Below, piece by piece: positions 4,250-54,064 of a stretch of DNA of 64,000 nucleotides (positions are counted from its first letter, which is position 1; every line of letters begins with the position of its first letter). The stretch covers positions 310,001 to 374,000 of the forward strand of contig NIVC01000629.1 in the NCBI GenBank assembly GCA_002269645.1. Direction: 5' to 3'. The translations under genes were made by a program, and so were the position numbers. The notes under the pieces were generated by a model that made no database searches, was not told the DNA's origin, and saw nothing but the letters and a program-made list of their open reading frames with translations. This DNA is from Macrostomum lignano (taxonomy: Eukaryota).

Positions 4250-5307
<1,058 letters not shown>

Positions 5308-6428: not shown

Positions 6429-6571
6429 AAGAGTTCTGATAAGAATGGTGGGTTGAGAGATTCAGTAAATTGCTTAGATAAAGCTGGACTCGGATGAAAG
6501 ATTATCTAATTCTAAAACCGATCAGCCAATCTATTTCAGAAAGGATATTGATTGTCCAGTCCCGGACTCGC

Positions 6572-7009
6572 CTGTACGTCAGTAGCGCAGCCCTCTTCCC
6601 TGAGCGCCCTCTCCAGCGCTCTCAGCGGCAGCGCCTCCCAGCGGCCGAACAGCACCAAGTCGATGTCGGAGGTGGGCAAGTACAGGCCGGTTCGCGAGCT
6701 GCCGAACACCTCCAGCCGGGCGTCGGGCCACAGGCGCAGCACGAGGGCCCGCAGGCGGTCAACAACTCGGCACCGGATCGCCGCCTCGGCCGGGGTCGGC
6801 GCCACCCACTGGTTGAACAGTAGAAGCTCCTCGTGCAGGCCGACGACGCCCGGGCTCAAGCGTCGGGGCCGCCGCCCGTCGGGCCCGAGAAGCCACGGCG
6901 GCAGTGGCAGCGGCTGGTGCTGCTGGATGCTGAAGTAACGCCTGTGCTGATTGGAGTAGCGACGCGACCGGGCGTGAGTCTTGGCCAGCCGCTGCTGCTG
7001 CTGGTTCAT
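6572..7009 (-). CDS. TENT4: TENT4 coding exon 1 (nucleotidyltransferase GS-x-DxD motif)
   Basis: GLHEELLLFNQWVAPTPAE...VFGSSRTGLYLPTSDIDLV; ATG at 7009; ends CAG|GCGAGT (GC donor). A further upstream coding exon is not excluded (acceptor at 7039-7040). Confidence 0.92.
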
Positions 7010-7625
7010 CTTTGGCAGGCTTATTATCTTCTGCTGCACTAATTTGCTATAAAAGTAGCAGAGGGACTGCGTGCTGCATCTATCAAAACAGAGTCACAAG
7101 CCAGTCAAAAAAGTTTATCTAGCCAATTTAAAACTATAAATAAGCTGAATGCTTTGACTTATAGGCTTATCATCTTAAAATATTTAATATATGTAAATTG
7201 TTTACATGCTATTTTTGTAATAGGTTGTCAAAATGAAATAGGAAAAGTTATTTGTATAGGATTTGTAGTGATCCGCTAGTTGGTGTTAGGCGTCCCACTC
7301 TGTTAGCAGCTACCCTTGCCCTCGCCCTCGCCCTGGGTTGCTGTCTGCCGCTGGGCAGCTTCCCGCTTCCCTCCTCTTGGCTGTCTGTTGCTGCCCCTCC
7401 CTTTCTTCTGCCCGTGTTGCCCTGCGTTTCTCAGCCCGCGACTTCTCTGTTGCGGGCTGTCCTTGTTTCGTCATTCTCTGTCTCCCTGTCTTGTGAGCTA
7501 GTCACATGACAGTTTCTGCGTTCTCTGAGTCTTAAAGTGCAGTAAACATGTTTACTGCACTTGCTGGCCCTGTTTACCGGGAGAGTCACATGCTTTCGGC
7601 CCCCTCCCTTTTCTAAGGAGAGGAG

Positions 7626-8305: not shown

Positions 8306-9115
8306 AAAGACCTACCAGGCCACCCCGAGAAAAACCATTGTACTTCAGATTTATAAAAATGGAATTTCAATAAAGGGTGCAGGACTAGCAAATACAAGCT
8401 TTATTGAAGAGACTCAGGGAGCCACTAATAGCCTTATCCCTATACAGCAATGTGCCATTGTTTAAAATGCCTAGCTAGATCTAAAACCCTAATGATCTCT
8501 TATTTAAGACTGCCAATGTCTATAAATACAATAAAGCTGCAACAGACTAATAAAAAGAACATACAGTTCATTTTACAAGATAATGGACACTCATTTTTGC
8601 TTAGTAAAATTAGCTAAAACTAGCACATTAAGTCCCCTATAGTGGGTATTCAATTTCAAAATTCAGACATAAAAGTATTAAAAACATTTTTTTATTTACT
8701 CATTTCCAAAATAAATCTTTAATGTTTAAATTTTTATATAAGCACATTAAGCCCCCTATGATGGCATTCAAATTCAAAATTAAAACAATGAAAGCATTAA
8801 AAAATGTTTCTTAAATATTTGACAAATTTCCTATTGCAATTGATATAAATTTTATATACCTATTTGCCAACTGAATCTGAATTAATTAGGCCCATTAACT
8901 ACTGCCACCATTTGCAATTGCACCACTTTCTTTGTGTTATAAATTAATACAAACAAGATTAAAGCAATTTAGATAGTTGATAAAAAGGCACATTGCATTT
9001 CAGGCTAGGCCTAGCTTTATAATCCAACTCTCTTTCATCAATTGTCTATAAGACTAGTAAATAATAAAATTCAATTATTTGATCAACACTATAAATTGCA
9101 AGTCTGCCAGGGTGC

Positions 9116-9485: not shown

Positions 9486-10666
9486 AATTACGGTTACTTG
9501 ATTTCAAATGCATTGAGAATTATTTCTAAACTCTTGATTTGTAAATTTTAACATTATAATTTACTAATTAATTATTTAGCTATTTTTTATTTGCTTATCA
9601 TTTCTTGTAAAAATACCATTTCCTTTGTTGTAATTCAATATAATTAAATTGTACATTCAAATGTACATTTATATTGGTGCAATTTTGAGAGTTGGTTTAA
9701 CAGAACAATTCTTGGCACAGATACAGCTATGAACATATCATATATACACAATACTGCATTGCATAATATATGTACATGTATATAAATGCACAGTTGACAA
9801 AGTAACTACCATTTTAAACTGTTTGCCATGGGATAGCTAGGCCCATGCAAAGGATGATAAAACTCCTTATATTATAGGCCTAGCTTTATTTAGAATATAT
9901 ATTCTATATTGGAAGTGCTTAACCCTACAGTCCTATACAAATAATTCCAATTTTATCCACACAGATCCATGTCAATAATTTCTAGCTTATCCCCTCAGCA
10001 GCTTATTGGAATAAAGAACCTTAAAATGAATCTGTTCAAAACCATCTATTTGTTTTCACTGTTTTACAAATCTTCCAAGTAAACTACTGAATACTGAATA
10101 GTATTGAATACTTTATTAAAACTTTTTTTGTCATTAAAAGGGTTAATTTTAAATATTTGCTTAGCTGCCAGCTTTGCTTACAATAACCAAATAGACCCTA
10201 AGATCAAGGTGAATGAGACTTGCAAAATTCAAAATTCAAAATGTAATAATAATAAGTAGGCCTATAATAATACTAATACTAATAATAATGACAATATCAA
10301 TTTATCTTCAATACACAAAAATAAACACAAACAACTGTACAATCTTATCTTATCTATGGCCTGGGGATAAGCTGAAAATTATTGATACAGATCCATGTAG
10401 ATCAGTGTTGCCACTACAGCAACCAAAGAAATTATCGCAGGATAAGAAAAAAATCGCAGGAACAAATTTCTTATTTGTCATAGAGAAAAAGGCGCCAGTA
10501 TGCAAAAACAACTTTCTTTTTTAGCTTTCCATTTCTAATTCCATCTTCTATTTGACTAAAAAAACTACTACAATTTGCAATAACTGCATGCAACTCTCAT
10601 TTACGCCAAATCAGTGAAGTAGTCATACAACACAAGCATTTTCTTAAGGGAAGACAGGCATACATA

Positions 10667-13867: not shown

Positions 13868-14310
13868 ACTTGACTCTGGATGTATACATGTACATGCTTA
13901 CATCTTGTTGTTGTTTATCATCCAATCAAGGACGACAACTTGATGCAACTTAATTGATGCCATCATTGACTATATTTACATGTAACTGCCACTGTAATGG
14001 GCCAAGGACCACTTTAGCATATAACAGCGTATCTTTTATCTCCACGGTGTATTTTTTCCAGGAAATTGGCCTCCAAAAATTACACGATCTTTGACTTTTA
14101 TCTTACATCCTGTTATACTACTTTTAAATTGAACGGTATTATACACACAATATGTTTTCAATAATTTTTTTATCAAAGACATGCAATAATCAACTCAAGA
14201 ACTACTAGCAGTATCGCTGATAGCAGCACATATAGATTGCTGCGATGGTGATATGGATTTTAACTATGAACTATTACGCATGCGATTGAACTATCTATGG
14301 TCATAATTCT

Positions 14311-14683
14311 GCTTCTTCATATTCGGGTCACGGACATTGTAGCTAGACGTAGCTAATAGGACCGGGTGCCTAGCACCATGCAGCCGGGGCGCTGACTCCG
14401 CGCGGGCGGACAGTAGACGACGGAATCCAATTTGCGGCCTGCGGCGGGTGGCCAGAGAGCGTGGGGACCCGAGTCCCGGTGCGCAGGGCTCCTCCGCAGA
14501 CCGACTTACGCTGTAAAAACCGCCATCCACCGCCAACCCAGCAGTAGGGGACAACTCTCCCAGGCGGCATTACCCGGAGGTGAGACCAATTCGTCACCCC
14601 GTCGGTGACAGGGACGCACGAAGCTCCTGCCACATTGGTGGGGTATCCAGGGGCGCGACGTGGACGCTGGTCTCATGCCACCC
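14311..14683 (-). mobile_element. 373-bp non-autonomous non-LTR retroposon (SIDE/SINE-like, possibly RTE-dependent), 14-bp TSD
   Basis: ATGGTCATAATTCT at 14297-14310 and 14684-14697; GC-rich insert in AT-rich flank; minus-strand 3' end GAAGAAGC; 5' end is a ribozyme fold. Confidence 0.85.
14582..14683 (-). ncRNA. HDV-like (CPEB3-type) self-cleaving ribozyme
   Basis: Minus strand: P1 GGGUGGC / GCCCCU (14654-14649, one bulge, G1.U wobble); P2 GAGACCA / UGGUCUC; P3 GCG / CGC; L3 UCCACGU; P1.1 CC / GG; branched P4; J4/2 CGAAU with catalytic C at 14593. Folded by eye only. Confidence 0.82.
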
Positions 14684-14746
14684 ATGGTCATAATTCTCGA
14701 AGACCCAGCAGTTACTAAAGAGCTGGGAGCACGAGGGAAAATGGAA

Positions 14747-16300: not shown

Positions 16301-17448
16301 ATGGGTCTACGACGTTTGCCAGCCGACGTTTGCCAGCTGACGTTTGCCTGTGGGACATTTGCCAGCCGACGTTTGCCAGCCGACGTTTGCCTGCGGGACA
16401 TTTGCCAGCCGACGTTTGCCAGCCAAAGTTTGCCTGCGGGACGTTTGCCAGCCGGACATTTGCAGGCGGCAATTTGTTTAAGGAAGTACGCCCTCTCTAG
16501 GCTTACATGTACTTGCATTTGAAAACTGTGGACACAGCACTAATCAAATTTCACCTCGCTCCCTACTACTGCTATTAAATATACAGGTTACTAACAAACT
16601 ACTGTTCAGGCTTGTTGAAGTTATTGCTCTTGTCTGCCTAAATATAAAGGTAAAAATACAAAATAGGAGTTTCCATCGTCCCGGTTGATGTCTATGTATG
16701 CCATGGAACGCCCCTTTCCATCTCAGTGGCCAAACAAGCTAAGTGTTTACAAGCTAAATGGGAAAAGACTGAGACATCCATAATGGTATTGGCTTAGTCT
16801 CGCCTATATATACTTAACTCAAAAGCCAAACTCTGCTTAACGGAGATTGGCCATGACAGCGTACACTTGACAAGCTGCATTGGAATTAATTCGCTTAATT
16901 TTGGATCTCCAAATGAACTGGGAAATATATAAGCCAGAATTATCGTTCAGCAGGTCTTTTATTTGCCCAAAACTTGACTCGCTGGAGATTCCCGTTTAAA
17001 TTTGCGTGTCTTCATTCGCAAATCAAAAATCAAACGTCTCAAACTGGGAAAAGCGATACAAAGCTGTCAGAAGTAAACTTTATAATATTTTCACATTCAA
17101 AGAAATTGTTGTTAAACTAGGATACTAGATTGATGAACTGCATAATTTGTATAGATTTTGTTTTCGAACTTCTATACATGCGAATAACCGTCAAAAAGTT
17201 GGACTGAAAAACCGGGTTTTTTTCAACCCGCTAAACTGCGAATATTTCAGTATCAACTTTTTCACTCACTGACTTAATGTTGGCTGGCAAAGGTCAGCTG
17301 GCAAACATCGGCTGGCAAACGTCGGCCGGCAAACGTCCCGCAGGCAAACGTCGGCTGGCAAACGTCCCACAGGCAAACGTCGGCTGGCAAACGTCCGGCA
17401 GGCAAACGTCGGCTGGCAAACGTCCGGCAGGCAAACGTCGCTATCCAT
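16301..17448. mobile_element. Foldback-like element: inverted arrays of 14-15-bp GACGTTTGCCAGCC subrepeats (16310-16465 and 17281-17440) around a 0.8-kb spacer
   Basis: Left array reads GACGTTTGCC, right array GGCAAACGTC; outer ends ATGG...CCAT; no clean TSD seen. Confidence 0.6.
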
Positions 17449-24150: not shown

Positions 24151-24224
24151 AACACACTCTATACATTAATTGTAGCATTCTAATCTATAAATATTTCTAT
24201 TAGGTATTAGTTCCTACTGTCTGT

Positions 24225-25475
24225 CCCAGTGTCTGTCTCAGTGTCTGTCTCAGTGTCTGTCTCAGTGCCTGTCTCAGTGTCTGTCCCAGTGTCTGTCCCA
24301 GTGTCTGTCTCAGTGCCTGTCTCATGTCTGTCTCAGTGTCTGTCCCAGTGTCTGTCTCAGTGTCTGTCTCAGTGTCTGTCTCAGCGTCTGTCTCAGTGTC
24401 TGTCTCAGTGTATGTCCCAGTGTCTGTCTCAGTGTCTGTCTCAGTGTCTGTCTCAGTGTGTGTCTCAGTGTGTGTCTCAGTGTGTGTCTCAGTGTCTGTC
24501 TCAATGTCTGTCTCAGTGCCTGTCTCATGTCTGTCTCAGTGTCTGTCCCAGTGTCTGTCTCAGTGTCTGTCCCAGTGTCTGTCTCAGTGCCTGTCTCATG
24601 TCTGTCTCAGTGTCTGTCTCAGTGTCTGTCTCAGTGTCTGTCTCAGTGTCTGTCCCAGTGTCTGTCCCAGTGTCTGTCCCAGTGTCTGTCCCAGTGTGTG
24701 TCTCAGTGTCTGTCTCAGTGTCTGTCTCAGTGTCTGTTTCAGTGTCTGTCTCAGTGTCTGTCTCAGTGTCTGTCTCAGTGTCTGTCTCAGTGTCTGTCTC
24801 AGTGTCTGTCCCAGCGTCTGTCTCAGTGTCTGTCCCAGTGGCTGTCTAAGTGCCTGTCTCAGTGTCTGTCCCAGTGTCTGTCTCAGTGTATGTCCCAGTG
24901 TCTGTCCCAGTGTCTGTCTCAGTGCCTGTCTCATGTCTGTCTCAGTGTATGTCCCAGTGTCTGTCTCAGTGTATGTCCCAGTGTCTGTCCCAGTGTCTGT
25001 CTCAGTGTATGTCTCAGTGTCTGTCCCAGTGTCTGTCTCAGTGCCTGTCTCGTGTCTGTCTCAGTGTCTGTCCCAGTGTCTGTCTCAGTGTCTGTCTCAG
25101 TGTCTGTCTCAGTGTCTGTCTCAGTGTCTGTCCCAGTGTCTGTCTCAGTGTCTGTCCCAGTGTCTGTCCCAGTGTCTGTCCCAGTGTCTGTCCCAGTGTC
25201 TGTCCCAGTGTCTGTCCCAGTGTCTGTCTCAGTGCCTGTCTCAGTGTCTGTCTCAGTGTCTGTCTCAGTTTCTGTCTCAGTGTCTGTCTCAGTGTCTGTC
25301 TCAGTGTCTGCCTCAGTGTCTGTCCCAGTGTCTGTCTCAGTGTCTGTCCCAGTGTCTGTCCCAGTGTCTGCCTCAGTGTCTGTCCCAGTGTCTGTCTCAG
25401 TGCCTGTCTCATGTCTGTCTCAGTGTCTGTCCCAGTGTATGTCTCAGTGTCTGTCTCAGTGTATGTCTCAGTGTC
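24225..25475. repeat. 12-bp satellite (TGTCTGTCTCAG)n, plus orientation
   Basis: About 100 copies; same family as 30895-32237 in opposite orientation. Confidence 0.95.
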
Positions 25476-26014
25476 TAAGTGTCTTTGTGTCCGCCCGTCC
25501 ATCTGTCTGTCCCCCTGTCCCCAGTCGATCCCATGCAGTTCCTATGCAACACCTACCTTTATCCCATCAATTGCTTTCATCATTCCCCAGGCAGTCAGGC
25601 CGTCAGTACGCCAGGCACGCGGCCCACAGAAGAGCTGCGACCACCCCCTGCTTTTCCTCTCCTCTGGACCGGCGCACCAGCACTGGTTTATCCCAGGATG
25701 GGGTCTTCAGACCTCGAAGCGCATCTTCTTCAAGTATTCCTTTGCTTAACTTTTCCCTCCAGGATTTTCTGCCCTCCAGCCGTGGCCGCCGCGTCTTTAA
25801 TACACCCCACGAACCGCAGCCTGAGAAAGCAACCAGAGCGGCAGGCATGAACTGGGGGACCGGCACTGCACGGGCCTGGTGAGTGGCCCCACAAGGAGAC
25901 AGGAAAAAATAAAGCTCTGCTCTCCAAGCGGTGAAGCTGATACTGAGATTCTTTAATATTTTCGTACGTGCAGTGTGGAAATAACTCAATGAGATGATCA
26001 GATCCCGATGGGAT

Positions 26015-30894: not shown

Positions 30895-32237
30895 CTGGCA
30901 GACACTGAGACAGACACTGAGACAGACACTGAGACAGACACTGAGACAGACACTGAGACAGACACTGAGACAGACACTGAGACAGACACTGAGACACACA
31001 CTGAGACAGACACTGGGACAGACACTGAGACAGACACTGAGACAGACACTGAGACAGACACTGAGGCAGACACTGGGACAGACACTGAAACAGACACTGA
31101 AACAGACACTGAGACAGACACTGAGACAGACACTGAGACAGACACTGAGACAGACACTGAAACAGACACTGAAACAGACACTGAGACACACACTGAGACA
31201 GACACTGAGACAGACACTGAAACACACACTGAGACAGACACTGAGACAGACACTGAGACAGACACTGAGACAGACACTGAGACAGACACTGAGACAGACA
31301 CTGAGACAGACACTGAGACACACACTGAGACAGACACTGAGACAGACACTGAGACAGACACTGAGACAGACACTGAGACAGACACTGAAACAGACACTGA
31401 GACAGACACTGAAACAGACACTGAAACAGACACTGAGACAGACACTGAGACAGACACTGAGACAGACACTGAGACAGACACTGAGACAGACACTGAGACA
31501 GACACTGAGGCAGACACTGAGACAGACACTGAGGCAGACACTGAGACAGACACTGAGACAGACACTGAGGCAGACACTGAGGCAGACACTGAGACAGACA
31601 CTGAGGCAGACACTGAGACAGACACTGAGACAGACACTGAGACAGACACTGAGACAGACACTGAGACAGACACTGAGGCAGACACTGACAGACACTGAGA
31701 CAGACACTGGGACAGACACTGGGACAGACACTGAGGCAGACACTGAGACAGACACTGAGACAGACACTGAGGCAGACACTGAGACAGACACTGAGACAGA
31801 CACTGAGGCAGACACTGAGGCAGACACTGACAGACACTGAGACAGACACTGGGACAGACACTGAGACAGACACTGAGACAGACACTGAGACAGACACTGG
31901 GACAGACACTGAGACAGACACTGAGACAGACACTGAGACAGACACTGAGACAGACACTGGGACAGACACTGGGACAGACACTGAGACAGACACTGAGACA
32001 GACACTGAGACAGACACTGAGACAGACACTGGGACAGACACTGAGACAGACACTGAGACAGACACTGAGACAGACACAGGGACAGACACTGAGACAGACA
32101 CAGGGACAGACACTGAGACAGACACTGGGACAGACACTGAGACAGACACTGAGACAGACACTGAGACAGACATTGAGACAGACACTGGGACAGACACTGA
32201 GACAGACACTGAGACAGACACTGAGGCAGACACTGAG
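30895..32237. repeat. 12-bp satellite (CAGACACTGAGA)n, minus orientation of the 24225-25475 family
   Basis: About 110 copies. Confidence 0.95.
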
Positions 32238-32695
32238 AGAAAAGTAGCGCAGCAGCAGCAGCCATACCGGGCGCTAACGGGGGGACTGCATGGGCATTTG
32301 AAGTGGGCATTGAAGAAGACAGTTGCCGCGGTCCTTGAAAGGGAAGAGAGAAGGCCCGAGGCTCGCTGCCCACTTTCCAGTCGCCGTCACCCAGTCGGAA
32401 TCTGAGGCCAAACCTGCCCGTCCCCGCCCCGGGTGTCCGATATTCTCGGCCATCGGCCGGTCAGCTGTTTGGATCTGATTCCTTCCCTTGCTGCGCCGGT
32501 GCCTCACTCTCGCTCCCAGTCTCCTCTCTTCCCCTCCCTTCACTCATTTCTCTCTATCCCTCGCCTGGTCTAAGTTGGGAATAATATACACACACTGCTG
32601 ACTGGAGTGGGCCCAGTTTAGATGAGCTCCACTAATCCTTTCCAGCAAATAATTTGAAACAGTCTTAACAGTTATTGTTAGTCACCACAGCTTAC

Positions 32696-37384: not shown

Positions 37385-39395
37385 ACGTCCTTCAGTGGGC
37401 GTCAGTACACCCCTCCGTCCTTCAGAAGGCGTCAGTACACCCCTCTGTCCTTCAGTGGGCGTCAGTACATCCCTCCGTCTTTCAGTGGGCGCCAGTACAC
37501 CCCTCCGTCCTTCAGAAGGCGTCAGTACACCCTCCGTCCTTCAGAAGGCGTCAGTATACCCTCCGTCCTTCAGAAGGCGTCAGTACACCCTCCGTCCTTC
37601 AGAAAGCGTCAGTACACCACTCCGTCCTTCAGAAGGCGTCAGTACACCCCTCCGTCCTTCAGAAGGCGTCAGTACACCACTCCGTCCTTCAGTGGGCGCC
37701 AGTACACCCCTCCGTCCTTCAAAAGGCGTCAGTACACCCTCCGTCCTTCAGAAGGCGTCAGTACACCACTCCGTCCTTCAGTGGGCGCCAGTACACCACT
37801 CCGTCCTTCAGTGGGCGTCAGTACACCCCTCCGTCCTTCAGTGTGCGTCAGTACACCACTCCGTCCTTCAGTGGGCGCCAGTACACCCTCCATCATTCAG
37901 TGGGCGCCAGTATACCCTCCATCATTCAGTGGGCGCCAGTATACCCTCCATCATTCAGTGGGCGCCAGTATACCCTCCATCATTCAGTGGGCGCCAGTAT
38001 ACCCTCCATGATTCAGTGGGCGCCAGTATACCCTCCATCATTCAGTGGGCGCCAGTATACCCTTCATCATTCAGTGAGAGCCAGTACACCCCTCCATCAG
38101 TCAGTGAGAGCCAGTACACCCCCATCAGTCAGTGGGAGCCAGTACACCCCCATCAGTCAGTGGGAGCCAGTACACCCCCATCAGTCAGTGGGAGCCAGTA
38201 CACCCCCATCAGTCAGTGGGAGCCAGTACACCCCCATCAGTCAGTGGGAGCCAGTACACCCCCATCAGTCAGTGAGAGCCAGTACACCCCCATCAGTCAG
38301 TGGGAGCCAGTACACCCCCATCAGTCAGTGGGAGCCAGTACACCTCTCCATCAGTCAGTGAGAGCCAGTACACCTCTCCATCAGTCAGTGGGAGCCAGTA
38401 CACCTCTCCATCAGTCAGTGAGAGCCAGTACACCTCTCCATCAGTCAGTGGGAGCCAGTACACCTCTCCATCAGTCAGTGGGAGCCAGTACACCTCTCTA
38501 TCAGTCAGTGGGAGCCAGTACACCTCTCCATCAGTCAGTGGGAGCCAGTACACCTCTCCATCAGTCAGTGGGAGCCAGTACACCTCTCCATCAGTCAGTG
38601 AGAGCCAGTACACCCCCATCAGTCAGTGAGAGCCAGTACACCCCCATCAGTCAGTGGGAGCCAGTACACCCCCATCAGTCAGTGAGAGCCAGTACACCCC
38701 CATCAGTCAGTGGGAGCCAGTACACCCCCATCAGTCAGTGGGAGCCAGTACACCTCTCCATCAGTCAGTGAGAGCCAGTACACCTCTCCATCAGTCAGTG
38801 GGAGCCAGTACACCTCTCCATCAGTCAGTGAGAGCCAGTACACCTCTCCATCAGTCAGTGAGAGCCAGTACACCCCCATCAGTCAGTGAGAGCCAGTACA
38901 CCCCCATCAGTCAGTGGGAGCCAGTACACCTCTCCATCAGTCAGTGGGAGCCAGTACACCTCTCCATCAGTCAGTGAGAGCCAGTACACCTCTCCATCAG
39001 TCAGTGAGAGCCAGTACACCTCTCCATCAGTCAGTGGGAGCCAGTACACCTCTCCATCAGTCAGTGGGAGCCAGTACACCTCTCCATCAGTCAGTGGGAG
39101 CCAGTACACCTCTCCATCAGTCAGTGGGAGCCAGTACACCTCTCCATCAGTCAGTGGGAGCCAGTACACCCCCATCAGTCAGTGGGAGCCAGTACACCTC
39201 TCCATCAGTCAGTGGGAGCCAGTACACCTCTCCATCAGTCAGTGGGAGCCAGTACACCTCTCCATCAGTCAGTGGGAGCCAGTACACCCCATCAGTCAGT
39301 GGGAGCCAGTACACCCCTCCATCAGTCAGTGGGAGCCAGTACACCTCTCCATCAGTCAGTGGGAGCCAGTACACCTCTCCATCAGTCAGTGGCGC
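37385..39395. repeat. 2-kb minisatellite, 27-30-bp unit with a sequence gradient
   Basis: CCGTCCTTCAGAAGGCGTCAGTACACCC drifts to CCATCAGTCAGTGGGAGCCAGTACACCTCT. Confidence 0.95.
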
Positions 39396-40049
39396 CAGTG
39401 CCTCCTCCCCATTATGAATATGCTATATTTTTAATTGCCCAGAGCAGACCCGATTGCAGCAGACTACACCGAAGTTTGCAGAGAAACTCTGCAGCAAATA
39501 AACTTTCCCAAGAAATCTTATTTTCCAACAAGTTTCAAAGCATTCTCCTGCCAAGCTCAAGTTCACGCAGACAGCTTGTATATGCGGCAGTGAGGCAGAG
39601 TCCCAGCCACTTGAATGGCGTGCTGGCGAGGCCCGAACAGCTATCTGCATTGTGCAAACACAGTATATTGGGCTTCTATTTCTGTGTTCTTATCTGCCCG
39701 GCTCTGTCTATTTCTTTATTCGATTTTCTGTTCTCTGCACAATGCGCTGCAGTCCAGCAGTGCCTGACACCTTGAAGAGCGCGTTGAGTGACTATAGAGT
39801 GAGGTGGCGGCTGCCGAATGAGAAAAATAAGTGGCTTCAGCACAAACTGCCAGCAGCAGCAAAGTCTGCAGAGTGCAAAGAACAAATTGGACTGTCTGAG
39901 AGCCAGGTGCTGCTAGCTCAAGGCTTGAGGCAGAGGCCTTTTCAACATTCGTTCAATGACAAGTTGGAACCCTTAATTAAACTAATTAAAATGCAACTTC
40001 TTAATCCGCTTTTGCCCAGGCTCTCGATTTATATTTATCGCGCTAGATC

Positions 40050-44878: not shown

Positions 44879-45574
44879 CTCAAGAGTCAGAAGCAGTCGA
44901 CTTCATTACCCCAGCCCTGTGAAAGTGTTTAGCAAGTTGTAAAAGGAACGCTTGTACTCAAGCATTAGTCGCATAACTGTTAACAATAGTAAGACTCAAG
45001 AACCTTGACAGCTGAGTGAGGCAAAGGCAATTTGAGAGCAACAGAAAGAAACGAAGGAGGACGAGTAAAAAAGTAAAGAAAAGTTGCTCTGGTTGCAAAC
45101 AGCCAAAGCCAATTTCAGCACGAGTGGCTCGCTTTCGCAATTGTCTAAAGCTAAAAGGCCTCCCTAGCCTCCAAGGCTCGCGCAGTGCATGTGCGACAGG
45201 CAGCCTCGCTGCTTAATCAAACAGGACTGGTTAACAAGCTTTTCCGAAGCACCGCGTGGGGCCCCGACATCTCAGCTTCTCTCTCTGTCCCCACCTTCCC
45301 CGCTTTGGCCCAGCTGTGAGGGCGCACTGGAATGCAGACCATATAAGCTATTAAATGCGGGGCCAGGGGGGAATGAGAGAAAACAGTTTCTTCAATTGCT
45401 TGCCAGCTCTCTCTCATTCTAAGCCTGTCTGCAGCACCACTGGGGCAGACGGAGTGTGCGGATTTAGCGGGTATACGGACTGCTGGCAGATAAGATATGC
45501 CATGGGGTGTTTACGGCCTTGACCAGAGTACAGGGCTGTCACTTCACAGTTCCTAGCTGGTCTGCTGTATGTGG

Positions 45575-48500
45575 TCTGGTGTGTGCGTGACCCATGTGGT
45601 CTGGTGAGTGTGTGACCCATGTGATTTGGTGAGTGTGTGACCCATGTGGTCTGGTGAGTGTGTGACCCCTGGTGAGTGTGAGACCCATGTGGTCTGGTGA
45701 GTGTGTGACCCCTGGTTAGTGTGTGAGTGACCCATGTGGTCTGGTGAGTGTGTGACCCCTGTGGTCTGGTGAGTGTGTGGCCCATGTGATTTGGTGAGTG
45801 TGTGACCCATGTGGTCTGGTGAGTGTGTGACCCCTGGTTAGTGTGTGACCCATGTGGTCTCGTGAGTGTGTGACCCCTGGTTAGTGTGTGAGTGACCCAT
45901 GTGGTCTGGTGAGTGTGTGGCTCATGTGGTCTGGTGAGTGTGTGACCCCTGGTTAGTGTGTGACCCATGTGGTCTCGTGAGTGTGTGACCCCTGGTTAGT
46001 GTGTGAGTGACCCATGTGGTCTGGTGATTGTGTGACCCATGTGGTCTGGTGAGTGTGTGACCCCTGTGGTCTGGTGAGTGTGTGGCCCATGTGATTTGGT
46101 GAGTGTGTGACCCATGTGGTCTGGTGAGTGTGTGACCCCTGGTTAGTGTGTGACCCATGTGGTCTCGTGAGTGTGTGACCCCTGGTTAGTGTGTGAGTGA
46201 CCCATGTGGTCTGGTGAGTGTGTGACCCATGTGGTCTGGTGAGTGTGTGGCCCATGTGATTTGGTGAGTGTGTGACCCATGTGGTCTGGTGAGTGTGTGA
46301 CCCCTGGTTAGTGTGTGACCCATGTGGTCTCGTGAGTGTGTGACCCCTGGTTAGTGTGTGAGTGACCCATGTGGTCTGGTGAGTGTGTGACCCATGTGGT
46401 CTGGTGAGTGTGTGACCCATGTGGTCTGGTGAGTGTGTGGCCTATGTGGTCTGGTGAGTGTGTGACCCATGTGGTCTGGTGAGTGTGTGACCCATGTGGT
46501 GTGGTGAGTGTGAGACCCATGTGGTCTGGTGAGTGTGTGACCCCTGGTTAGTGTCTGACCCATGTGGTCTCGTGAGTGTGTGACCCCTGGTTAGTGTGTG
46601 TGTGACCCATGTGGTCTGGTGAGTGTGTGACCCATGTGGTCTGGTGAGTGTGTGACCCATGTGGTCTGGTGAGTGTGTGGCCTATGTGGTCTGGTGAGTG
46701 AGTGACCCATGTGGTCTGGTGAGTGTGTGACCCATGTGGTCTGGTGAGTGTGTGACCCATGTGGTCTGGTGAGTGTGTGGCCTATGTGGTCTGGTGAGTG
46801 AGTGACCCATGTGGTCTGGTGAGTGTGTGACCCATGTGGTCTGGTGAGTGTGTGACCCATGTGGTCTGGTGAGTGTGTGACCCCTGGTGAGTGTGAGACC
46901 CATGTGGTCTGGTGAGTGTCACCCCTGGTGAGTGTGAGACCCATGTGGTCTGGTGAGTGTCACCCCTGGTGAGTGTGAGACCCATGTGGTCTGGTGAGTG
47001 TGCGACCCATGTGGTCTGGTGAGTGTGTGGCCTATGTGATCTGGTGAGTGTGTGACCCATGTGGTCTGGTGAGTGTGTGGCCTATGTGGTCTGGTGAGTG
47101 TGTGGCCTATGTGGTCTGGTGAGTGTGTGACCCCTGGTGAGTGTGAGACCCATGTGGTCTGGTGAGTGTGTGACCCCTGGTGAGTGTGAGAACCATGTGG
47201 TCTGGTGAGTGTGCGACCCATGTGGTCTGGTGAGTGTGAGACCCATGTGGTCTGGTGAGTGTGTGACCCCTGGTGAGTGTGAGAACCATGTGGTCTGGTG
47301 AGTGTGCGACCCATGTGGTCTGGTGAGTGTGAGACCCATGTGGTCTGGTGAGTGTGTGGCCTATGTGGTCTGGTGAGTGTGTGGCCTATGTGGTCTGGTG
47401 AGTGTGTGGCCTATGTGGTCTGGTGAGTGTGTGGCCTATGTGGTCTGGTGAGTGTGTGACCCATGTGGTCTGGTGAGTGTGTGACCCATGTGGTCTGGTG
47501 AGTGTGTGACCCATGTGGTCTGGTGAGTGTGTGGCCTATGTGGTCTGGTGAGTGTGTGACCCATGTGGTCTGGTGAGTGTGTGACCCATGTGGTCTGGTG
47601 AGTGTGTGACCCTTGTGGTCTGGTGAGTTTGTGACCCATGTGGTCTGGTGAGTGTGTGACCCATGTGGTCTGGTGAGTGTGTGACCCATGTGGTCTGGTG
47701 AGTGTGTGGCCTATGTGGTCTGGTGAGTGTGTGACCCATGTGGTCTGGTGAGTGTGTGACCCATGTGGTCTGGTGAGTGTGTGACCCTTGTGGTCTGGTG
47801 AGTGTGTGACCCATGTGGTCTGGTGAGTGAGTGACCTATGTGGTCTGGTGAGTGTGTGACCCATGTGGTCTGGTGAGTGAGTGACCCATGTGGTCTGGTG
47901 AGTGTGTGACCCATGTGGTCTGGTGAGTGAGTGACCCATGTGGTCTGGTGAGTGTGTGACCCCTGGTGAGTGTGAGACCCATGTGGTCTCGTGAGTGTGT
48001 GACCCCTGGTTAGTGTGTGAGTGACCCATGTGGTCTGGTGAGTGCGTGACCCATGTGGTCTGGTGAGTGTGTGACCCATGTGATTTGGTGAGTGTGTGAC
48101 CCATGTGGTCTGGTGAGTGTGTGACCCCTGTGGTCTAATGAGTGTGTGGCCCATGTGATTTGGTGAGTGTGTGACCCATGTGGTCTGGTGAGTGTGTGAC
48201 CCCTGGTTAGTGTGTGACCCATGTGGTCTCGTGAGTGTGTGACCCCTGGTTAGTGTGTGAGTGACCCATGTGGTCTGGTGAGTGTGTGGCTCATGTGGTC
48301 TGGTGAGTGTGTGGCCCATGTGATTTGGTGAGTGTGTGACCCATGTGGTCTGGTGAGTGTGTGACCCCTGGTTAGTGTGTGACCCATGTGGTCTCGTGAG
48401 TGTGTGACCCCTGGTTAGTGTGTGAGTGACCCATGTGGTCTGGTGAGTGTGTGACCCATGTGGTCTGGTGAGTGTGTGACCCATGTGGTCTGGTGAGTGT

Positions 48501-51243
48501 GTGGCCTATGTGGTCTGGTGAGTGTGTGACCCATGTGGTCTGGTGAGTGTTTGACCCATGTGGTCTGGTGAGTGTGAGACCCATGTGGTCTGGTGAGTGT
48601 GTGACCCCTGGTTAGTGTGTGACCCATGTGGTCTCGTGAGTGTGTGACCCCTGGTTAGTGTGTGAGTGACCCATGTGGTCTGGTGAGTGTGTGACCCATG
48701 TGGTCTGGTGAGTGTGTGACCCATGTGGTCTGGTGAGTGTGTGGCCTATGTGGTCTGGTGAGTGTGTGACCCATGTGGTCTGGTGAGTGTTTGACCCATG
48801 TGGTCTGGTGAGTGTGAGACCCATGTGGTCTGGTGAGTGTGTGACCCCTGGTTAGTGTGTGACCCATGTGGTCTCGTGAGTGTGTGACCCCTGGTTAGTG
48901 TGTGAGTGACCCATGTGGTCTGGTGAGTGTGTGACCCCTGGTGAGTGTGAGACCCATGTGGTCTGGTGAGTGTCACCCCTGGTGAGTGTGAGACCCATGT
49001 GGTCTGGTGAGTGTGTGACCCATGTGGTCTGGTGAGTGTGTGGCCTATGTGGTCTGGTGAGTGAGTGACCCATGTGGTCTGGTGAGTGTGTGACCCATGT
49101 GGTCTGGTGAGTGTGTGACCCATGTGGTCTGGTGAGTGTGTGGCCTATGTGGTCTGGTGAGTGAGTGACCCATGTGGTCTGGTGAGTGTGTGACCCATGT
49201 GGTCTGGTGAGTGTGTGACCCATGTGGTCTGGTGAGTGTGTGACCCCTGGTGAGTGTGAGACCCATGTGGTCTGGTGAGTGTGTGACCCCTGATGAGTGT
49301 GAGAACCATGTGGTCTGGTGAGTGTGAGACCCATGTGGTCTGGTGAGTGTGCGACCCATGTGGTCTGGTGAGTGTGTGGCCTATGTGGTCTGGTGAGTGT
49401 GTGGCCTATGTGGTCTGGTGAGTGTGTGGCCTATGTGGTCTGGTGAGTGTGTGGCCTATGTGGTCTGGTGAGTGTGTGGCCCCTGGTGAGTGTGTGACCC
49501 ATGTGGTCTGGTGAGTGTGTGACCCATGTGGTCTGGTGAGTGTGTGACCCATGTGGTCTGGTGAGTGTGTGGCCTATGTGGTTTGGTGAGTGTGTGACCC
49601 ATGTGGTCTGGTGAGTGTGTGACCCATGTGGTCTGGTGAGTGTGTGACCCTTGTGGTCTGGTGAGTTTGTGACCCATGTGGTCTGGTGAGTGTGTGACCC
49701 ATGTGGTCTGGTGAGTGTGTGACCCATGTGGTCTGGTGAGTGTGTGGCCTATGTGGTCTGGTGAGTGTGTGACCCATGTGGTCTGGTGAGTGTGTGACCC
49801 ATGTGGTCTGGTGAGTGTGTGACCCTTGTGGTCTGGTGAGTGTGTGACCCATGTGGTCTGGTGAGTGAGTGACCTATGTGGTCTGGTGAGTGTGTGACCC
49901 ATGTGGTCTGGTGAGTGAGTGACCCATGTGGTCTGGTGAGTGTGTGACCCATGTGGTCTGGTGAGTGAGTGACATATGTGGTCTGGTGAGTGTGTGACCC
50001 CTGGTGAGTGTGTGACCCATGTGGTCTGGTGAGTGTGTGACCCCTGGTTAGTGTGTGAGTGACCCATGTGGTCTGGTGAGTGTGTGACCCCTGTGGTCTG
50101 GTGAGTGTGCGACCCATGTGGTCTGGTGAGTGTGTGAACCATGTGGTCTGGTGAGTGTGTGACCCATGTGGTCTGGTGAGTGTGTGACCCCTGGTGAGTG
50201 TGTGACCCCTGGTGAGTGTGAGACCCATGTGGTCTGGTGAGTGTGTGACCCCTGGTGAGTGTGAGACCCATGTGGTCTGGTGAGTGTGTGACCCCTGGTG
50301 AGTGTGAGACCCATGTGGTCTGGTCAGTGTGTGACCCTTGGTGAGTGTGAGACCCATGTGGTCTGGTGAGTGTGCGACCCATGTGGTCTGGTGAGTGTGT
50401 GGCCTATGTGGTCTGGTGAGTGTGTGGCCTATGTGGTCTGGTGAGTGTGTGGCCCCTGGTGAGTGTGTGACCCATGTGGTCTGGTGAGTGTGTGACCCAT
50501 GTGGTCTGGTGAGTGTGTGACCCATGTGGTCTGGTGAGTGTGAGACCCATGTGGTCTGGTGAGTGTGTGACCCCTGGTTAGTGTGTGACCCATGTGGTCT
50601 CGTGAGTGTGTGACCCCTGGTTAGTGTGTGAGTGACCCATGTGGTCTGGTGAGTGTGTGACCCATGTGGTCTGGTGAGTGTGTGACCCATGTGGTCTGGT
50701 GAGTGTGTGACCCATGTGGTCTGGTGAGTGTGTGGCCTATGTGGTCTGGTGAGTGAGTGACCCATGTGGTCTGGTGAGTGTGTGACCCATGTGGTCTGGT
50801 GAGTGTGTGACCCATGTGGTCTGGTGAGTGTGTGGCCTATGTGGTCTGGTGAGTGAGTGACCCATGTGGTCTGGTGAGTGTGTGACCCATGTGGTCTGGT
50901 GAGTGTGTGACCCATGTGGTCTGGTGAGTGTGTGACCCCTGGTGAGTGTGAGACCCATGTGGTCTGGTGAGTGTCACCCCTGGTGAGTGTGAGACCCATG
51001 TGGTCTGGTGAGTGTCACCCCTGGTGAGTGTGAGAACCATGTGGTCTGGTGAGTGTGTGACCCATGTGGTCTGGTGAGTGTGTGACCCCTGGTTAGTGTG
51101 TGACCCATGTGGTCTGGTGAGTGTGTGACCCATGTGGTCTGTTGAGTGTGTGACCCATGTGGTCTGGTGAGTGAGTGACCCATGTGGTCTGGTGAGTGAG
51201 TGACCCATGTGGTCTGGTGAGTGAGTGACCCATGTGGTCTGGT
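45575..51243. repeat. 5.7-kb satellite, 25-bp unit (CCCATGTGGTCTGGTGAGTGTGTGA) with shorter variants and higher-order duplications
   Basis: Roughly 230 units; source of all GHTLTRPHGSHTHQTT pseudo-ORFs. Confidence 0.97.
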
Positions 51244-53251: not shown

Positions 53252-54064
53252 TCAGAAGTCCTCGGCATAGGAGCCGGGAAAGATGCCCCTGTTGCCGGCG
53301 GAGTCCTCGCCGAGCCACCAGCCGTCGGCGCACTTCTCCAGCACGCTGACGACGTCGCCCTCGCGCAGGCTGAGCTCGTCATCGCCTGTGGCTGGATAGT
53401 CGAACAGGGCGCGGGCCCAGCCGCAAACTCGAACAGCTGCGTCCGCTGCATCAACCGACTCAGCTTCAGCTGCCGATTCTGACTCCGGCTCCTCAGCCGT
53501 GGTGCTCAGCTGAGTCGGGTGCGGGGGCGGCAGCGGAGCGCGCTGGCGCCGGGCGGAGGTCGGTGGCGCGGTGTCCGAAGCTTGGCACTGCGGCAAGTCC
53601 AGCTGTGCGTAGGTCGGATCGTCCAGATCGTCAGCGCTGTCGGTCAGGTGTCGGCCATTCAACAGTCCGCCGGATGCGGCCTCTCGACTGACATCGTCAG
53701 CACCGTAGTCGCGAAGGTCCGGCAGAGCGGCCGCGCCGGCGGAGGCGGCCGTGGCGTGGCCGGCTGCAGTGGAGGAGTTGTTGGAAGAATCAGCTGACTG
53801 AGCAGAGGAGGCGCGGCGCAGGGCTGGCGCCAGCCGGAGCACCGTCTGCGGCATGCCCAGGCGGTCCTTGCTGCGCTCCAGACAGTGCGCCAGGCTGAAC
53901 ACCGGCCTGCAGGGCGGCGGCGACCCGGCCAGGGCGTGCAGCGCCAGCTCCTGCTTGTAGCGGGAGGCCTCCAGGAACAGCAGGGTGGAGCTGATGCTGG
54001 CCAGCTTGGAGGCGGCCTCGTGCTGCGATGCTGCCTCGGCGAAGCCCGGACTGCTGCTGTACAC
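53252..54064 (-). CDS. NOSTRIN: NOSTRIN-like F-BAR protein, exon 6 (HR1 C-terminal half, linker, SH3, stop TGA 53252-53254)
   Basis: ARALFDYPATGDDELSLREGDVVSVLEKCADGWWLGEDSAGNRGIFPGSY is a canonical SH3; acceptor at 54065-54066, phase 0. Confidence 0.92.
   Translation of the reverse strand: MYSSSPGFAEAASQHEAASKLASISSTLLFLEASRYKQELALHALAGSPPPCRPVFSLAHCLERSKDRLGMPQTVLRLAPALRRASSAQSADSSNNSSTAAGHATAASAGAAALPDLRDYGADDVSREAASGGLLNGRHLTDSADDLDDPTYAQLDLPQCQASDTAPPTSARRQRAPLPPPHPTQLSTTAEEPESESAAEAESVDAADAAVRVCGWARALFDYPATGDDELSLREGDVVSVLEKCADGWWLGEDSAGNRGIFPGSYAEDF

What the first reader, a model, noticed from the sequence alone, without database searches (positions are those of the whole stretch)
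14297..14697. Ribozyme-headed mini-retroposon: HDV/CPEB3-like ribozyme begins exactly at the 5' TSD boundary of a 373-bp insertion
Seen: all nested double-pseudoknot elements are present on the minus strand (P1, P1.1, P2 7/7 bp, P3, L3 UCCACGU, J4/2 CGAAU). The predicted cleavage site (5' of G1, 14683) coincides to the nucleotide with the element end defined independently by a 14-bp TSD. The core GCG-UCCACGU-CGC-GCCCCU closely resembles the CPEB3 ribozyme core as I recall it. P4 is expanded into a multi-hairpin domain. The other 270 nt are non-coding and end in a GAAGAAG tail. Established: HDV-like ribozymes process the 5' ends of R2, RTE and L1Tc non-LTR elements, and short internally deleted R2 derivatives (SIDEs) keep the ribozyme and 3' end. 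Inference: this is a full-length copy of a non-autonomous, ribozyme-processed family with no evident Pol III promoter, probably mobilised by an RTE-like partner and possibly undescribed in this lineage.
Basis: partly seen in the sequence, partly recalled or inferred. Interest (0 to 1): 0.85.

Follow-up and report, generated by a model that had tools for sequence, protein, structure and literature searches.

The report
Ribozyme-headed short retroposon in a flatworm
A 373-bp insertion flanked by a 14-bp target-site duplication starts, to within one base, at the predicted cut site of an HDV-like self-cleaving ribozyme, so it is very probably a small non-coding retroposon that trims its own RNA 5' end: a clean new example of a known kind, in a Macrostomum-like flatworm genome.

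Summary
Window 14683..14311 (minus strand) is a 373-bp, 64% GC insertion in 36-38% GC DNA. It is bounded by an exact 14-bp direct repeat. Its first 103 nt contain every element of the HDV-like double pseudoknot, with the catalytic C at 14593.

The fold motif alone is not rare: about 0.5 chance hits per shuffled window. Its position is. None of 5000 shuffles of the element put a predicted cut site at element nt 1-2.

Three findings are new.
- A second, independent copy with the same 5' start is embedded in a Macrostomum lignano gene model.
- Metagenome contigs hold a separate high-copy family of about 0.85 kb. It has the same ribozyme core, P2 covariation, copies that start at P1 directly after their TSDs, and a 3' hairpin plus GAAGA-type tail like the window element.
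- There is no Pol III head and no coding capacity.

I read it as a ribozyme-processed non-autonomous LINE derivative, like R2 SIDEs, NARTc and bipartite non-autonomous LINEs. The partner LINE, the copy number, the exact cleavage register (±1 nt; P1 has a bulge or mismatch) and catalytic activity remain untested. It is a new member of a known kind, of moderate interest.

The parts
14684..14697 (-). 5' copy of the target-site duplication, AGAATTATGACCAT
   Evidence: Exact 14-mer present only twice in the window (0.02 expected by chance).
14311..14683 (-). The whole 373-bp non-coding retroposon (nt 1 = 14683)
   Evidence: 63.8% GC against 36-38% in the flanks. Single copy in the window. No terminal inverted repeats. 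Bounded by the TSD.
14581..14683 (-). HDV-like ribozyme domain (nt 1-103)
   Evidence: RF00094 aligns over its full length at 22 bits. It is the only descriptor hit in the window. In 5000 shuffles none placed G1 at nt 1-2.
14677..14683 (-). P1 5' strand, GGGUGGC. The predicted cleavage is 5' of G14683 (register A), or 5' of G14682 (register B).
   Evidence: Register A (U4 bulged) scores -8.4 kcal/mol and register B (U4xC33 mismatch) -5.1 kcal/mol, each with P3. Sister-family copies start at GGUGGC.
14668..14674 (-). P2 5' strand, GAGACCA
   Evidence: Pairs 7/7 with 14582-14588. It is also present in the MFE fold.
14655..14667 (-). P3 (GCG/CGC) enclosing L3 UCCACGU. C21 and C22 of L3 form P1.1.
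   Evidence: the only hit of model R1 in the window. Identical to the sister-family core.
14647..14654 (-). P1 3' strand GCCCCU followed by the P1.1 GG
   Evidence: Read from the sequence. The sister family has GCCACUGG here.
14595..14645 (-). P4, one long irregular hairpin
   Evidence: The unconstrained fold of nt 38-90 closes 39-44 with 84-89, -23.4 kcal/mol.
14589..14594 (-). J4/2, ACGAAU, with the putative catalytic C at 14593
   Evidence: Aligned to the catalytic-C position of RF00094.
14582..14588 (-). P2 3' strand, UGGUCUC
   Evidence: Complementary to 14668-14674.
14356..14580 (-). Non-coding GC-rich body, predicted to form a long imperfect hairpin
   Evidence: Whole-element fold z = -1.98. 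Nt 135-284 are shared with the second copy, P0003.
14340..14355 (-). 3' stem-loop, UAGCUA-CGUC-UAGCUA
   Evidence: Present in the MFE fold. Matches in position the GGCAGC-TTAATT-GCTGCC hairpin of the sister family.
14311..14320 (-). 3' tail, AUGAAGAAGC
   Evidence: The sister family ends ...GCATG + (GAAGA)n-like tails. The TSD begins AGAA, so there is possible microhomology at the priming site.
14297..14310 (-). 3' copy of the target-site duplication

Best explanation
This is a short, non-coding, non-LTR retroposon: an internally deleted ('bipartite') LINE derivative or a SINE-like element without a Pol III head.

Proposed mechanism:
- The element has no promoter of its own and is transcribed as part of a longer host or read-through transcript.
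- Its first ~103 nt fold into an HDV-like double pseudoknot.
- C14593 catalyses cleavage at the 5' edge of P1, 5' of G14683 or one base further in. This releases an RNA whose 5' end is exactly the element's 5' end.
- A 3' stem-loop plus a short purine-rich tail (GAAGAAG) is recognised in trans by the reverse transcriptase of an unidentified partner LINE.
- Target-primed reverse transcription at a staggered nick then makes the 14-bp duplication.

Shown: the boundaries, the fold elements, a second copy, and the same architecture in a high-copy sister family with covariation.

Inferred: catalysis, co-transcription, mobilisation in trans, and the identity of the partner.
For: - **Insertion:** an exact 14-bp TSD and a sharp GC step at both edges, with no terminal inverted repeats.
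- **Fold:** all HDV elements are present in the canonical order.
- **Position:** the predicted cut site coincides with the TSD edge. In 5000 shuffles of the element, 0 reproduce this.
- **Second copy:** in a Macrostomum lignano UniRef gene model, aa 271-291 equal element nt 1-63 at 100% and aa 297-346 equal nt 135-284 at 92%. The rest of that protein is absent from the window.
- **Sister family:** about 45 metagenome copies begin at GGTGGC with unrelated upstream DNA.
  - In the alignment of 36 intact copies, 93% of structure cells are paired, against 30-47% in the slid controls.
  - Two P2 pairs covary: UA 18 / GC 16 and AU 25 / GC 9.
  - Four of six complete copies have 11-13-bp TSDs directly abutting G1.
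  - The 3' end is a hairpin plus a (GAAGA)n-like tail.
- **No Pol III head, no coding:**
- **Precedent:** ribozymes at LINE 5' ends and bipartite non-autonomous LINEs that keep them (PMC5786205, PMC3414825, PMC3185411).
Against: - Rfam gathering scores are not reached: 22 against 50 bits for HDV and 11.6 against 35 for CPEB3.
- The fold motif alone is not rare: 0.5 per shuffled window.
- MFE stability of the ribozyme segment is unremarkable, z = -0.6.
- P1 carries a bulge or mismatch. Such defects have been linked to loss of in vitro cleavage in other HDV-like ribozymes (PMC3774820).
- Only two copies are known, and the second is known only as a translation.
- No partner LINE was found.
- The covariation comes from the sister family, not from this family. 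That family was found by seeding with an 18-mer from this ribozyme, so core identity is partly built in.
Confidence: 0.78

Rival explanations
1. This is a one-off dead copy. A full-length autonomous LINE with a 5' ribozyme suffered an internal deletion, during or after insertion. The 373 bp is a relic, not a member of a propagating non-autonomous family.
For: Only one DNA copy is in hand, and it is single-copy in the window. Internally deleted LINE copies are common. The partner is unknown.
Against: The second copy, at a different locus, has the same junction of head and body: nt 1-63, then nt 120-284 in the same order. A private deletion would not be shared. The sister family shows that short ribozyme-headed elements do amplify to high copy number.
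Confidence: 0.12
2. The fold is a chance resemblance. This is a GC-rich TSD-flanked insertion of some other kind, and its 5' end merely happens to satisfy a degenerate HDV descriptor.
For: The descriptor hits 0.53 times per shuffled window. Rfam scores are below threshold. Folding energy is unremarkable.
Against: None of 5000 shuffles placed a hit at element nt 1-2. The core is shared over 31 nt at 90% with a family whose fold shows compensatory changes and whose copies start at P1. The catalytic C, L3 and J4/2 match the HDV and CPEB3 consensus.
Confidence: 0.06
3. This is a conventional Pol III SINE (tRNA-, 7SL- or 5S-derived head) and the ribozyme-like fold is irrelevant.
For: The size (373 bp) and the TSD fit a SINE.
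Against: ARAGORN finds no tRNA. No tRNA, 7SL or 5S match appears at E <= 10 in the 501-nt Rfam search. There is no A-box or B-box match.
Confidence: 0.02
4. This is a host-domesticated regulatory ribozyme, like the one in the CPEB3 intron, acting on a host transcript. The TENT4-like exon lies 7.3 kb downstream on the same strand.
For: Same strand as the TENT4-like exon at 6536-7039. The core resembles CPEB3.
Against: The intact TSD and tail indicate a recent insertion. A second copy sits in an unrelated gene. There is no evidence of conservation at this locus.
Confidence: 0.02

Closest known systems
R2 SIDEs (short internally deleted R2 elements, Drosophila; PMC3414825)
   Same: Non-coding elements that keep the parent's 5' HDV-like ribozyme and its 3' RT-binding end. 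The 5' end is defined by self-cleavage of a co-transcript.
   Different: SIDEs insert at the R2 site of 28S rDNA. This element sits in AT-rich unique DNA with a 14-bp TSD, which points to an APE-type, not site-specific, partner. No R2 homology was shown.
NARTc / RIME / SIDER with the L1Tc-ingi Pr77 ribozyme (trypanosomatids; PMC3185411, PMC3383444, PMC4035085)
   Same: A short non-autonomous partner of a LINE that shares its first ~77 nt, which encode an HDV-like ribozyme at the very 5' end.
   Different: Pr77 is also an internal promoter, and those elements end in poly(A). Here no promoter is evident and the tail is GAAGAAG. The host phylum is different.
Bipartite non-autonomous LINEs of the RTE clade, and RTE 5' HDV-like ribozymes such as drz-Agam-2 (Ruminski 2011 as cited in PMC5786205)
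   Same: The 5' LINE end, including a ribozyme, is joined to the 3' LINE end. There is no Pol III head, and the tails are short simple repeats rather than poly(A).
   Different: The RTE affiliation is not demonstrated here. No partner sequence is available.
Mammalian CPEB3 ribozyme (Rfam RF00622)
   Same: Near-identical P3/L3/P1' core (GCG-UYCACGU-CGC-G.CCCCUG) and a CGAAU J4/2.
   Different: CPEB3 is a single conserved intronic locus in mammals, 68 nt long with a short P4. The Rfam score here is 11.6 against 35 bits. This one heads a mobile element.
Ribozyme-bearing retroelements of Schistosoma mansoni: twister-variant-headed LINEs and the hammerhead Sm-alpha SINE (PMC8501958)
   Same: Flatworm retroposons that use a small self-cleaving ribozyme for RNA processing.
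   Different: The ribozyme class differs: twister or hammerhead there, HDV-like here.

Membership tests
HDV-like self-cleaving ribozyme (structural class) | Nested double pseudoknot with P1, P2, P3, P1.1 and P4 in the canonical 5'-3' order | tested here: met
   All helices are present at the stated positions. RF00094 aligns end to end.
HDV-like self-cleaving ribozyme (structural class) | Contiguous 6-7-bp P1 closed by a G1.U wobble at the cleavage site | tested here: inconclusive
   A G.U closing pair is present. P1 needs either a bulged U4 (register A, 6 bp) or a U4xC33 mismatch (register B, 5 bp). P1 defects have been linked to lost in vitro activity (PMC3774820).
HDV-like self-cleaving ribozyme (structural class) | Catalytic C in J4/2 just 5' of the P2 3' strand | tested here: met
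   C14593 lies in GACGAAU and aligns to the model's catalytic C.
HDV-like self-cleaving ribozyme (structural class) | Rfam RF00094 gathering score | tested here: not met
   22 bits against 50. This is a weak negative: the same library also misses the covariation-supported sister ribozymes entirely.
HDV-like self-cleaving ribozyme (structural class) | Compensatory base changes among homologues | tested here: inconclusive
   No second DNA copy of this family is available. The sister family shows two covarying P2 pairs. P2 also differs in a compensatory way between the two families: GAGACCA/UGGUCUC against GUGACA/UGUCAC.
HDV-like self-cleaving ribozyme (structural class) | Mg2+-dependent site-specific self-cleavage, abolished by mutating the catalytic C | not testable with these tools
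   Needs a wet-lab assay.
CPEB3 ribozyme (RF00622) | Rfam gathering score, and location in the CPEB3 intron of mammals | tested here: not met
   11.6 against 35 bits, a partial match to model positions 16-43. The host is a flatworm-like genome.
Non-autonomous LINE derivative (SIDE / bipartite non-autonomous LINE) | TSD-flanked, no TIRs, no coding capacity | tested here: met
Non-autonomous LINE derivative (SIDE / bipartite non-autonomous LINE) | Several dispersed copies with the same short structure | tested here: inconclusive
   Two loci are known: the window, and the copy inside P0003. The genome was not searchable.
Non-autonomous LINE derivative (SIDE / bipartite non-autonomous LINE) | 5' and 3' ends shared with an autonomous LINE of the same genome | not testable with these tools
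   No eukaryotic genome collection was available. The window holds no other sequence similar to the element.
R2 SIDE | Insertion at the R2 site of 28S rDNA | tested here: not met
   The target is AGAATTATGACCAT, in 36-38% GC DNA outside tandem arrays, and the Rfam scan found no rRNA in the window.
Pol III SINE | tRNA-, 7SL- or 5S-derived head with A/B boxes | tested here: not met

The most novel reading that the evidence does not exclude
The window element and the ~0.85-kb metagenome family may be two members of a so far undescribed, widely distributed class. Its members would be promoter-less, HDV-ribozyme-headed, SINE-like retroposons with a 3' hairpin and (GAAGA)n-type tails, mobilised by one LINE lineage in several invertebrate groups. 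Their P3/L3/P1' core is almost the same as that of the mammalian CPEB3 ribozyme. Such elements would then be a concrete candidate for the kind of retroposon from which CPEB3-type ribozymes were domesticated.
Probability: 0.3. Interest if true: 0.6.

Novelty: new member of a known kind. Interest (0 to 1): 0.45.

Why it matters
- It is an unusually clean, nucleotide-resolved case. The end of a mobile element defined by its target-site duplication coincides with the predicted cut site of a self-cleaving ribozyme.
- In the held literature, S. mansoni LINEs had no ribozyme association before twister variants were reported (PMC8501958).
- The one literature search for Macrostomum plus ribozyme returned two papers. 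The one listed is unrelated by title, and neither was opened.
- With the sister family found here, the case suggests that short ribozyme-headed retroposons are more widespread than the few described examples: R2 SIDEs, NARTc and RTE bipartites.
- Covariance-model annotation misses these ribozymes.
- The element gives a compact substrate (about 105 nt) for testing how P1 defects and long P4 or J1/2 inserts affect HDV-like catalysis.
- An exonised copy in M. lignano lacks the 3' half of the ribozyme. This hints that a ribozyme-dead state may be needed for such a copy to survive inside an mRNA.

Tried and rejected
- **Rfam at gathering thresholds over the whole window:** no match.
- **Exact look-up of ten window ORFs in the protein collection:** none present. 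The encoding contig of P0003 is not on record, so the DNA of the second copy could not be fetched.
- **18-mer core scan of bacterial/archaeal genomes and viral contigs:** hits lie in GC-rich prokaryotic or viral sequence and share little or nothing with the element beyond the seed. I treat them as chance and discarded them.
- **Covariance model R1 built from the sister family:** it recovers only the P3/L3 hairpin in the window (10.8 bits, E = 0.11). It cannot bridge the 48-nt J1/2 insert, so it gives no formal proof that the two families are homologous.
- **MFE z-scores:** uninformative for a pseudoknot.
- **Search for the partner LINE:** no similar sequence in the window. Ten long window ORFs scanned against Pfam gave no reverse-transcriptase match. 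One sister-family locus (L044) holds an RT C-terminus that looks RTE/CR1-like by eye (no Pfam scan was run on it), but its 3' end is unrelated to the family.
- **Species confirmation:** the TENT4-like exon found no M. lignano protein. The SH3 exon hit only an M. lignano protein, at 52% identity. 'M. lignano or a close relative' therefore remains an inference.
- **Profile-free scan of 1.84 billion representatives with the element ORF:** only P0003 is a real hit.
- **DNA-transposon reading:** rejected. There are no TIRs, and by general knowledge a 14-bp TSD is too long for one.

Full report
**Anatomy**

On the minus strand the window reads ...TCG-AGAATTATGACCAT-[GGGTGGCATGAGACCAGCGTCCACGTCGCGCCCCTGG ... 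ATGAAGAAGC]-AGAATTATGACCAT-AGATAG. The 14-mer occurs only at these two places; 0.02 matches are expected by chance. Among 14-mers that occur exactly twice, 100-2000 bp apart, only this pair and one other lie outside the window's many tandem arrays. The 373 bp between the copies is 63.8% GC, and the flanks are 35.8% and 38.0%. The element has no terminal inverted repeats and occurs once in the window. This is the signature of a retroposon insertion with a 14-bp target-site duplication.

**The ribozyme fold**

Numbering starts at G14683 = nt 1.
- P1: G1-C7 with G30-U35.
- P2: G10-A16 with U96-C102, 7/7 pairs, with a possible U9-A103.
- P3: G17-G19 with C27-C29.
- L3: UCCACGU.
- P1.1: C21-C22 with G36-G37.
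- P4: nt 39-89. On its own it folds into one long irregular hairpin that closes 39-44 with 84-89 at -23.4 kcal/mol. It is not a multi-hairpin domain.
- J4/2: GACGAAU, with C91 = 14593.

The Rfam HDV model (RF00094) aligns over its whole length at 14685..14581(-). It puts G1 at 14683 and the catalytic C at 14593. It scores only 22 bits against a gathering score of 50. The CPEB3 model matches 28 nt of the core at 11.6 bits. No family reaches its gathering score anywhere in the window.

P1 is imperfect. Register A (G1.U35, U4 bulged, six pairs) is 3.3 kcal/mol better than register B (G2.U35, U4xC33 mismatch, G1 unpaired).

**Is it more than chance?**

A deliberately permissive descriptor finds only this site in the real window. 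It requires:
- a 3-bp GC-rich P3 and a 7-nt L3;
- a 2-bp GC P1.1;
- a 6-7-bp P1, with one bulge or mismatch allowed and a G at +1;
- an adjacent P2 of at least 5 bp;
- C-N-R-A before the P2 3' strand.

It also gives 0.53 hits per block-wise dinucleotide shuffle of the window, or 0.12 with P2 of at least 7 bp. The motif alone therefore proves nothing. The MFE z-score of the segment is only -0.6.

What matters is position. In 5000 dinucleotide shuffles of the element inside its real flanks, 43 had any hit and none had its G1 at element nt 1 or 2.

**A second copy**

A six-frame pseudo-protein of the element found one significant protein among 5.8 billion clusters. It is a UniRef gene model of Macrostomum lignano, a WD-repeat protein of 428 aa.
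- Residues 271-291 (GWHETSVHVAPLDTPPMWQEL) are the frame-1 translation of element nt 1-63, at 100% identity.
- Residues 297-346 are nt 135-284, at 92%.
- The rest of the protein is absent from the window.

So a second, diverged copy sits in another gene, with the same 5' start (GGN-TGG-CAY) and the same body. The peptide junction fits nt 64 joined to nt 120. That copy therefore lacks nt 65-119: the 3' half of P4, J4/2 and the P2 3' strand. I infer that only a ribozyme-dead copy could persist inside an mRNA. A word-index-free scan of 1.84 billion representatives found nothing further.

The only hit for an SH3 exon of the window is also an M. lignano protein, at 52% identity. M. lignano is reported to be unusually rich in simple and tandem repeats (PMC5730564), like this window. 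The source is probably M. lignano or a relative, but this is not proven: the TENT4-like exon found no M. lignano protein.

**A sister family**

I scanned metagenome contigs for the 18-mer CAGCGTCCACGTCGCGCC. Besides chance hits in GC-rich bacteria, about 60 loci from a few JGI samples carry a repeat that matches element nt 15-45 at about 90%.
- About 45 copies with intact 5' sequence begin at GGTGGCGAAAGTAC, with unrelated upstream DNA.
- They fold into an HDV-like pseudoknot: P1 GGUGGC/GCCACU, a 48-nt J1/2 with its own hairpin, P2, the identical P3/L3, P1.1 and P4.
- Over 36 distinct copies, 93% of cells are paired, against 30-47% when partners are slid.
- Two P2 pairs covary: UA 18 / GC 16 and AU 25 / GC 9.
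- Complete copies are about 0.85 kb.
- They end in a hairpin (GGCAGC-TTAATT-GCTGCC), then TGCCCYGCATG, then a (GAAGA)n-like tail.
- Four of six complete copies have 11-13-bp TSDs that abut G1 directly.

This is the same design as the window element, which has a ribozyme head, the 3' hairpin UAGCUA-CGUC-UAGCUA, the tail AUGAAGAAGC, and a TSD that begins AGAA.

Three caveats apply. The family was found with a seed taken from this ribozyme. A covariance model built from it recovers only P3/L3 in the window (10.8 bits, E = 0.11). Its host organism is unknown. Rfam does not detect this family at all, so the sub-threshold Rfam score of the window ribozyme is weak negative evidence.

**Cleavage register**

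Sister-family copies start at GGUGGC, a 6-bp P1. The window element and the M. lignano copy both have one more G. There are two readings.
- The family uses a 7-nt 5' strand with U4 bulged. Cleavage is then 5' of G14683, exactly at the TSD edge.
- The consensus has A33, giving a perfect GGUGGC/GCCACU, and G14683 is an untemplated addition.

In the sister family the base before GGTGGC varies. In the second copy nt 33 is a silent third codon position, so it cannot decide between the readings. I give the site as 14683/14682.

**What it is not**

- Not a Pol III SINE: no tRNA, no tRNA, 7SL or 5S similarity at E <= 10, and no A or B boxes.
- Not protein-coding.
- Not an R2 SIDE: the target is unique AT-rich DNA, not 28S rDNA.
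- Not a member of the CPEB3 family by Rfam's criterion.

**Mechanism and comparison**

The best reading is a ribozyme-processed non-autonomous LINE derivative. A read-through transcript is cut by the 5' ribozyme. The 3' hairpin and tail recruit a partner reverse transcriptase, and target-primed reverse transcription makes the TSD.

This is how R2 SIDEs (PMC3414825), NARTc and RIME with the L1Tc ribozyme (PMC3185411, PMC3383444) and bipartite non-autonomous LINEs (PMC5786205) are understood to work. [quoted passage not shown] It lists RTE, Ingi and R2 as the clades that generate bipartite non-autonomous elements.

The element lies on the same strand as a TENT4-like exon 7.3 kb downstream, which is compatible with co-transcription but does not show it.

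**Verdict**

The element is a new member of a known kind. Two held papers contain both Macrostomum and ribozyme; the one listed is a flatworm-transcriptome study of ciliate parasites and neither was opened, so I found no sign of a prior description. Interest is moderate.

Noticed in passing
window 1-64000; for example 45569-51243, 37392-39399, 24218-25476, 30899-32238: The window is dominated by minisatellite arrays: 104 TRF rows, with units of 4-185 bp and arrays up to 5.7 kb. This matches the repeat-rich genome reported for Macrostomum lignano.
   Followed up: partly
window 16310-16463 vs 17282-17440; 24218-25476 vs 30899-32238; 1953-2383 vs 4251-5034: Several arrays come in inverted pairs whose units are exact (or 86%) reverse complements of each other. 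These are foldback-like arrangements of tandem repeats, 0.8-5.4 kb apart.
   Followed up: partly
window 6536-7039 (-): An exon encodes a TENT4/PAPD5-like nucleotidyltransferase palm domain (Pfam PF01909 and PF22600). The nearest database proteins are only 61% and 46% identical.
   Followed up: partly
window 53252-54064 (-): An exon carries an SH3 domain. Its only significant database hit is an M. lignano F-BAR protein at 52% identity.
   Followed up: partly
window 9006-9020 and 9875-9889: This is the only other two-copy 14-mer direct repeat (100-2000 bp apart) outside tandem arrays: AGGCCTAGCTTTAT. It flanks an ~855-bp AT-rich stretch that contains a 3 x 89-bp tandem repeat. It may be another insertion.
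   Followed up: no
L001-L120, for example L023, L030, L066, L101 (metagenome contigs Ga0209149, Ga0209339, JGI24668 and others): A high-copy ~0.85-kb non-coding retroposon family. It has an HDV-like ribozyme head with a 48-nt J1/2 hairpin insert and P2 covariation. It also has a 3' hairpin, (GAAGA)n-like tails and 8-13-bp TSDs. The host organism is unknown, and Rfam does not detect the ribozyme.
   Followed up: yes
L053 ~475-560; L044 1-633: L053 carries a different repeat with the same CAGCGTCCACGTCGCGCCACT core, possibly a third ribozyme family. L044 holds the C-terminus of a LINE reverse transcriptase that looks RTE/CR1-like by eye (not scanned against Pfam), next to a family copy but not sharing its 3' end.
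   Followed up: no
P0003 residues 271-346 (Macrostomum lignano UniRef gene model): A copy of the element is annotated as coding sequence inside a WD-repeat gene model. It appears to lack element nt 65-119, the 3' half of the ribozyme.
   Followed up: partly
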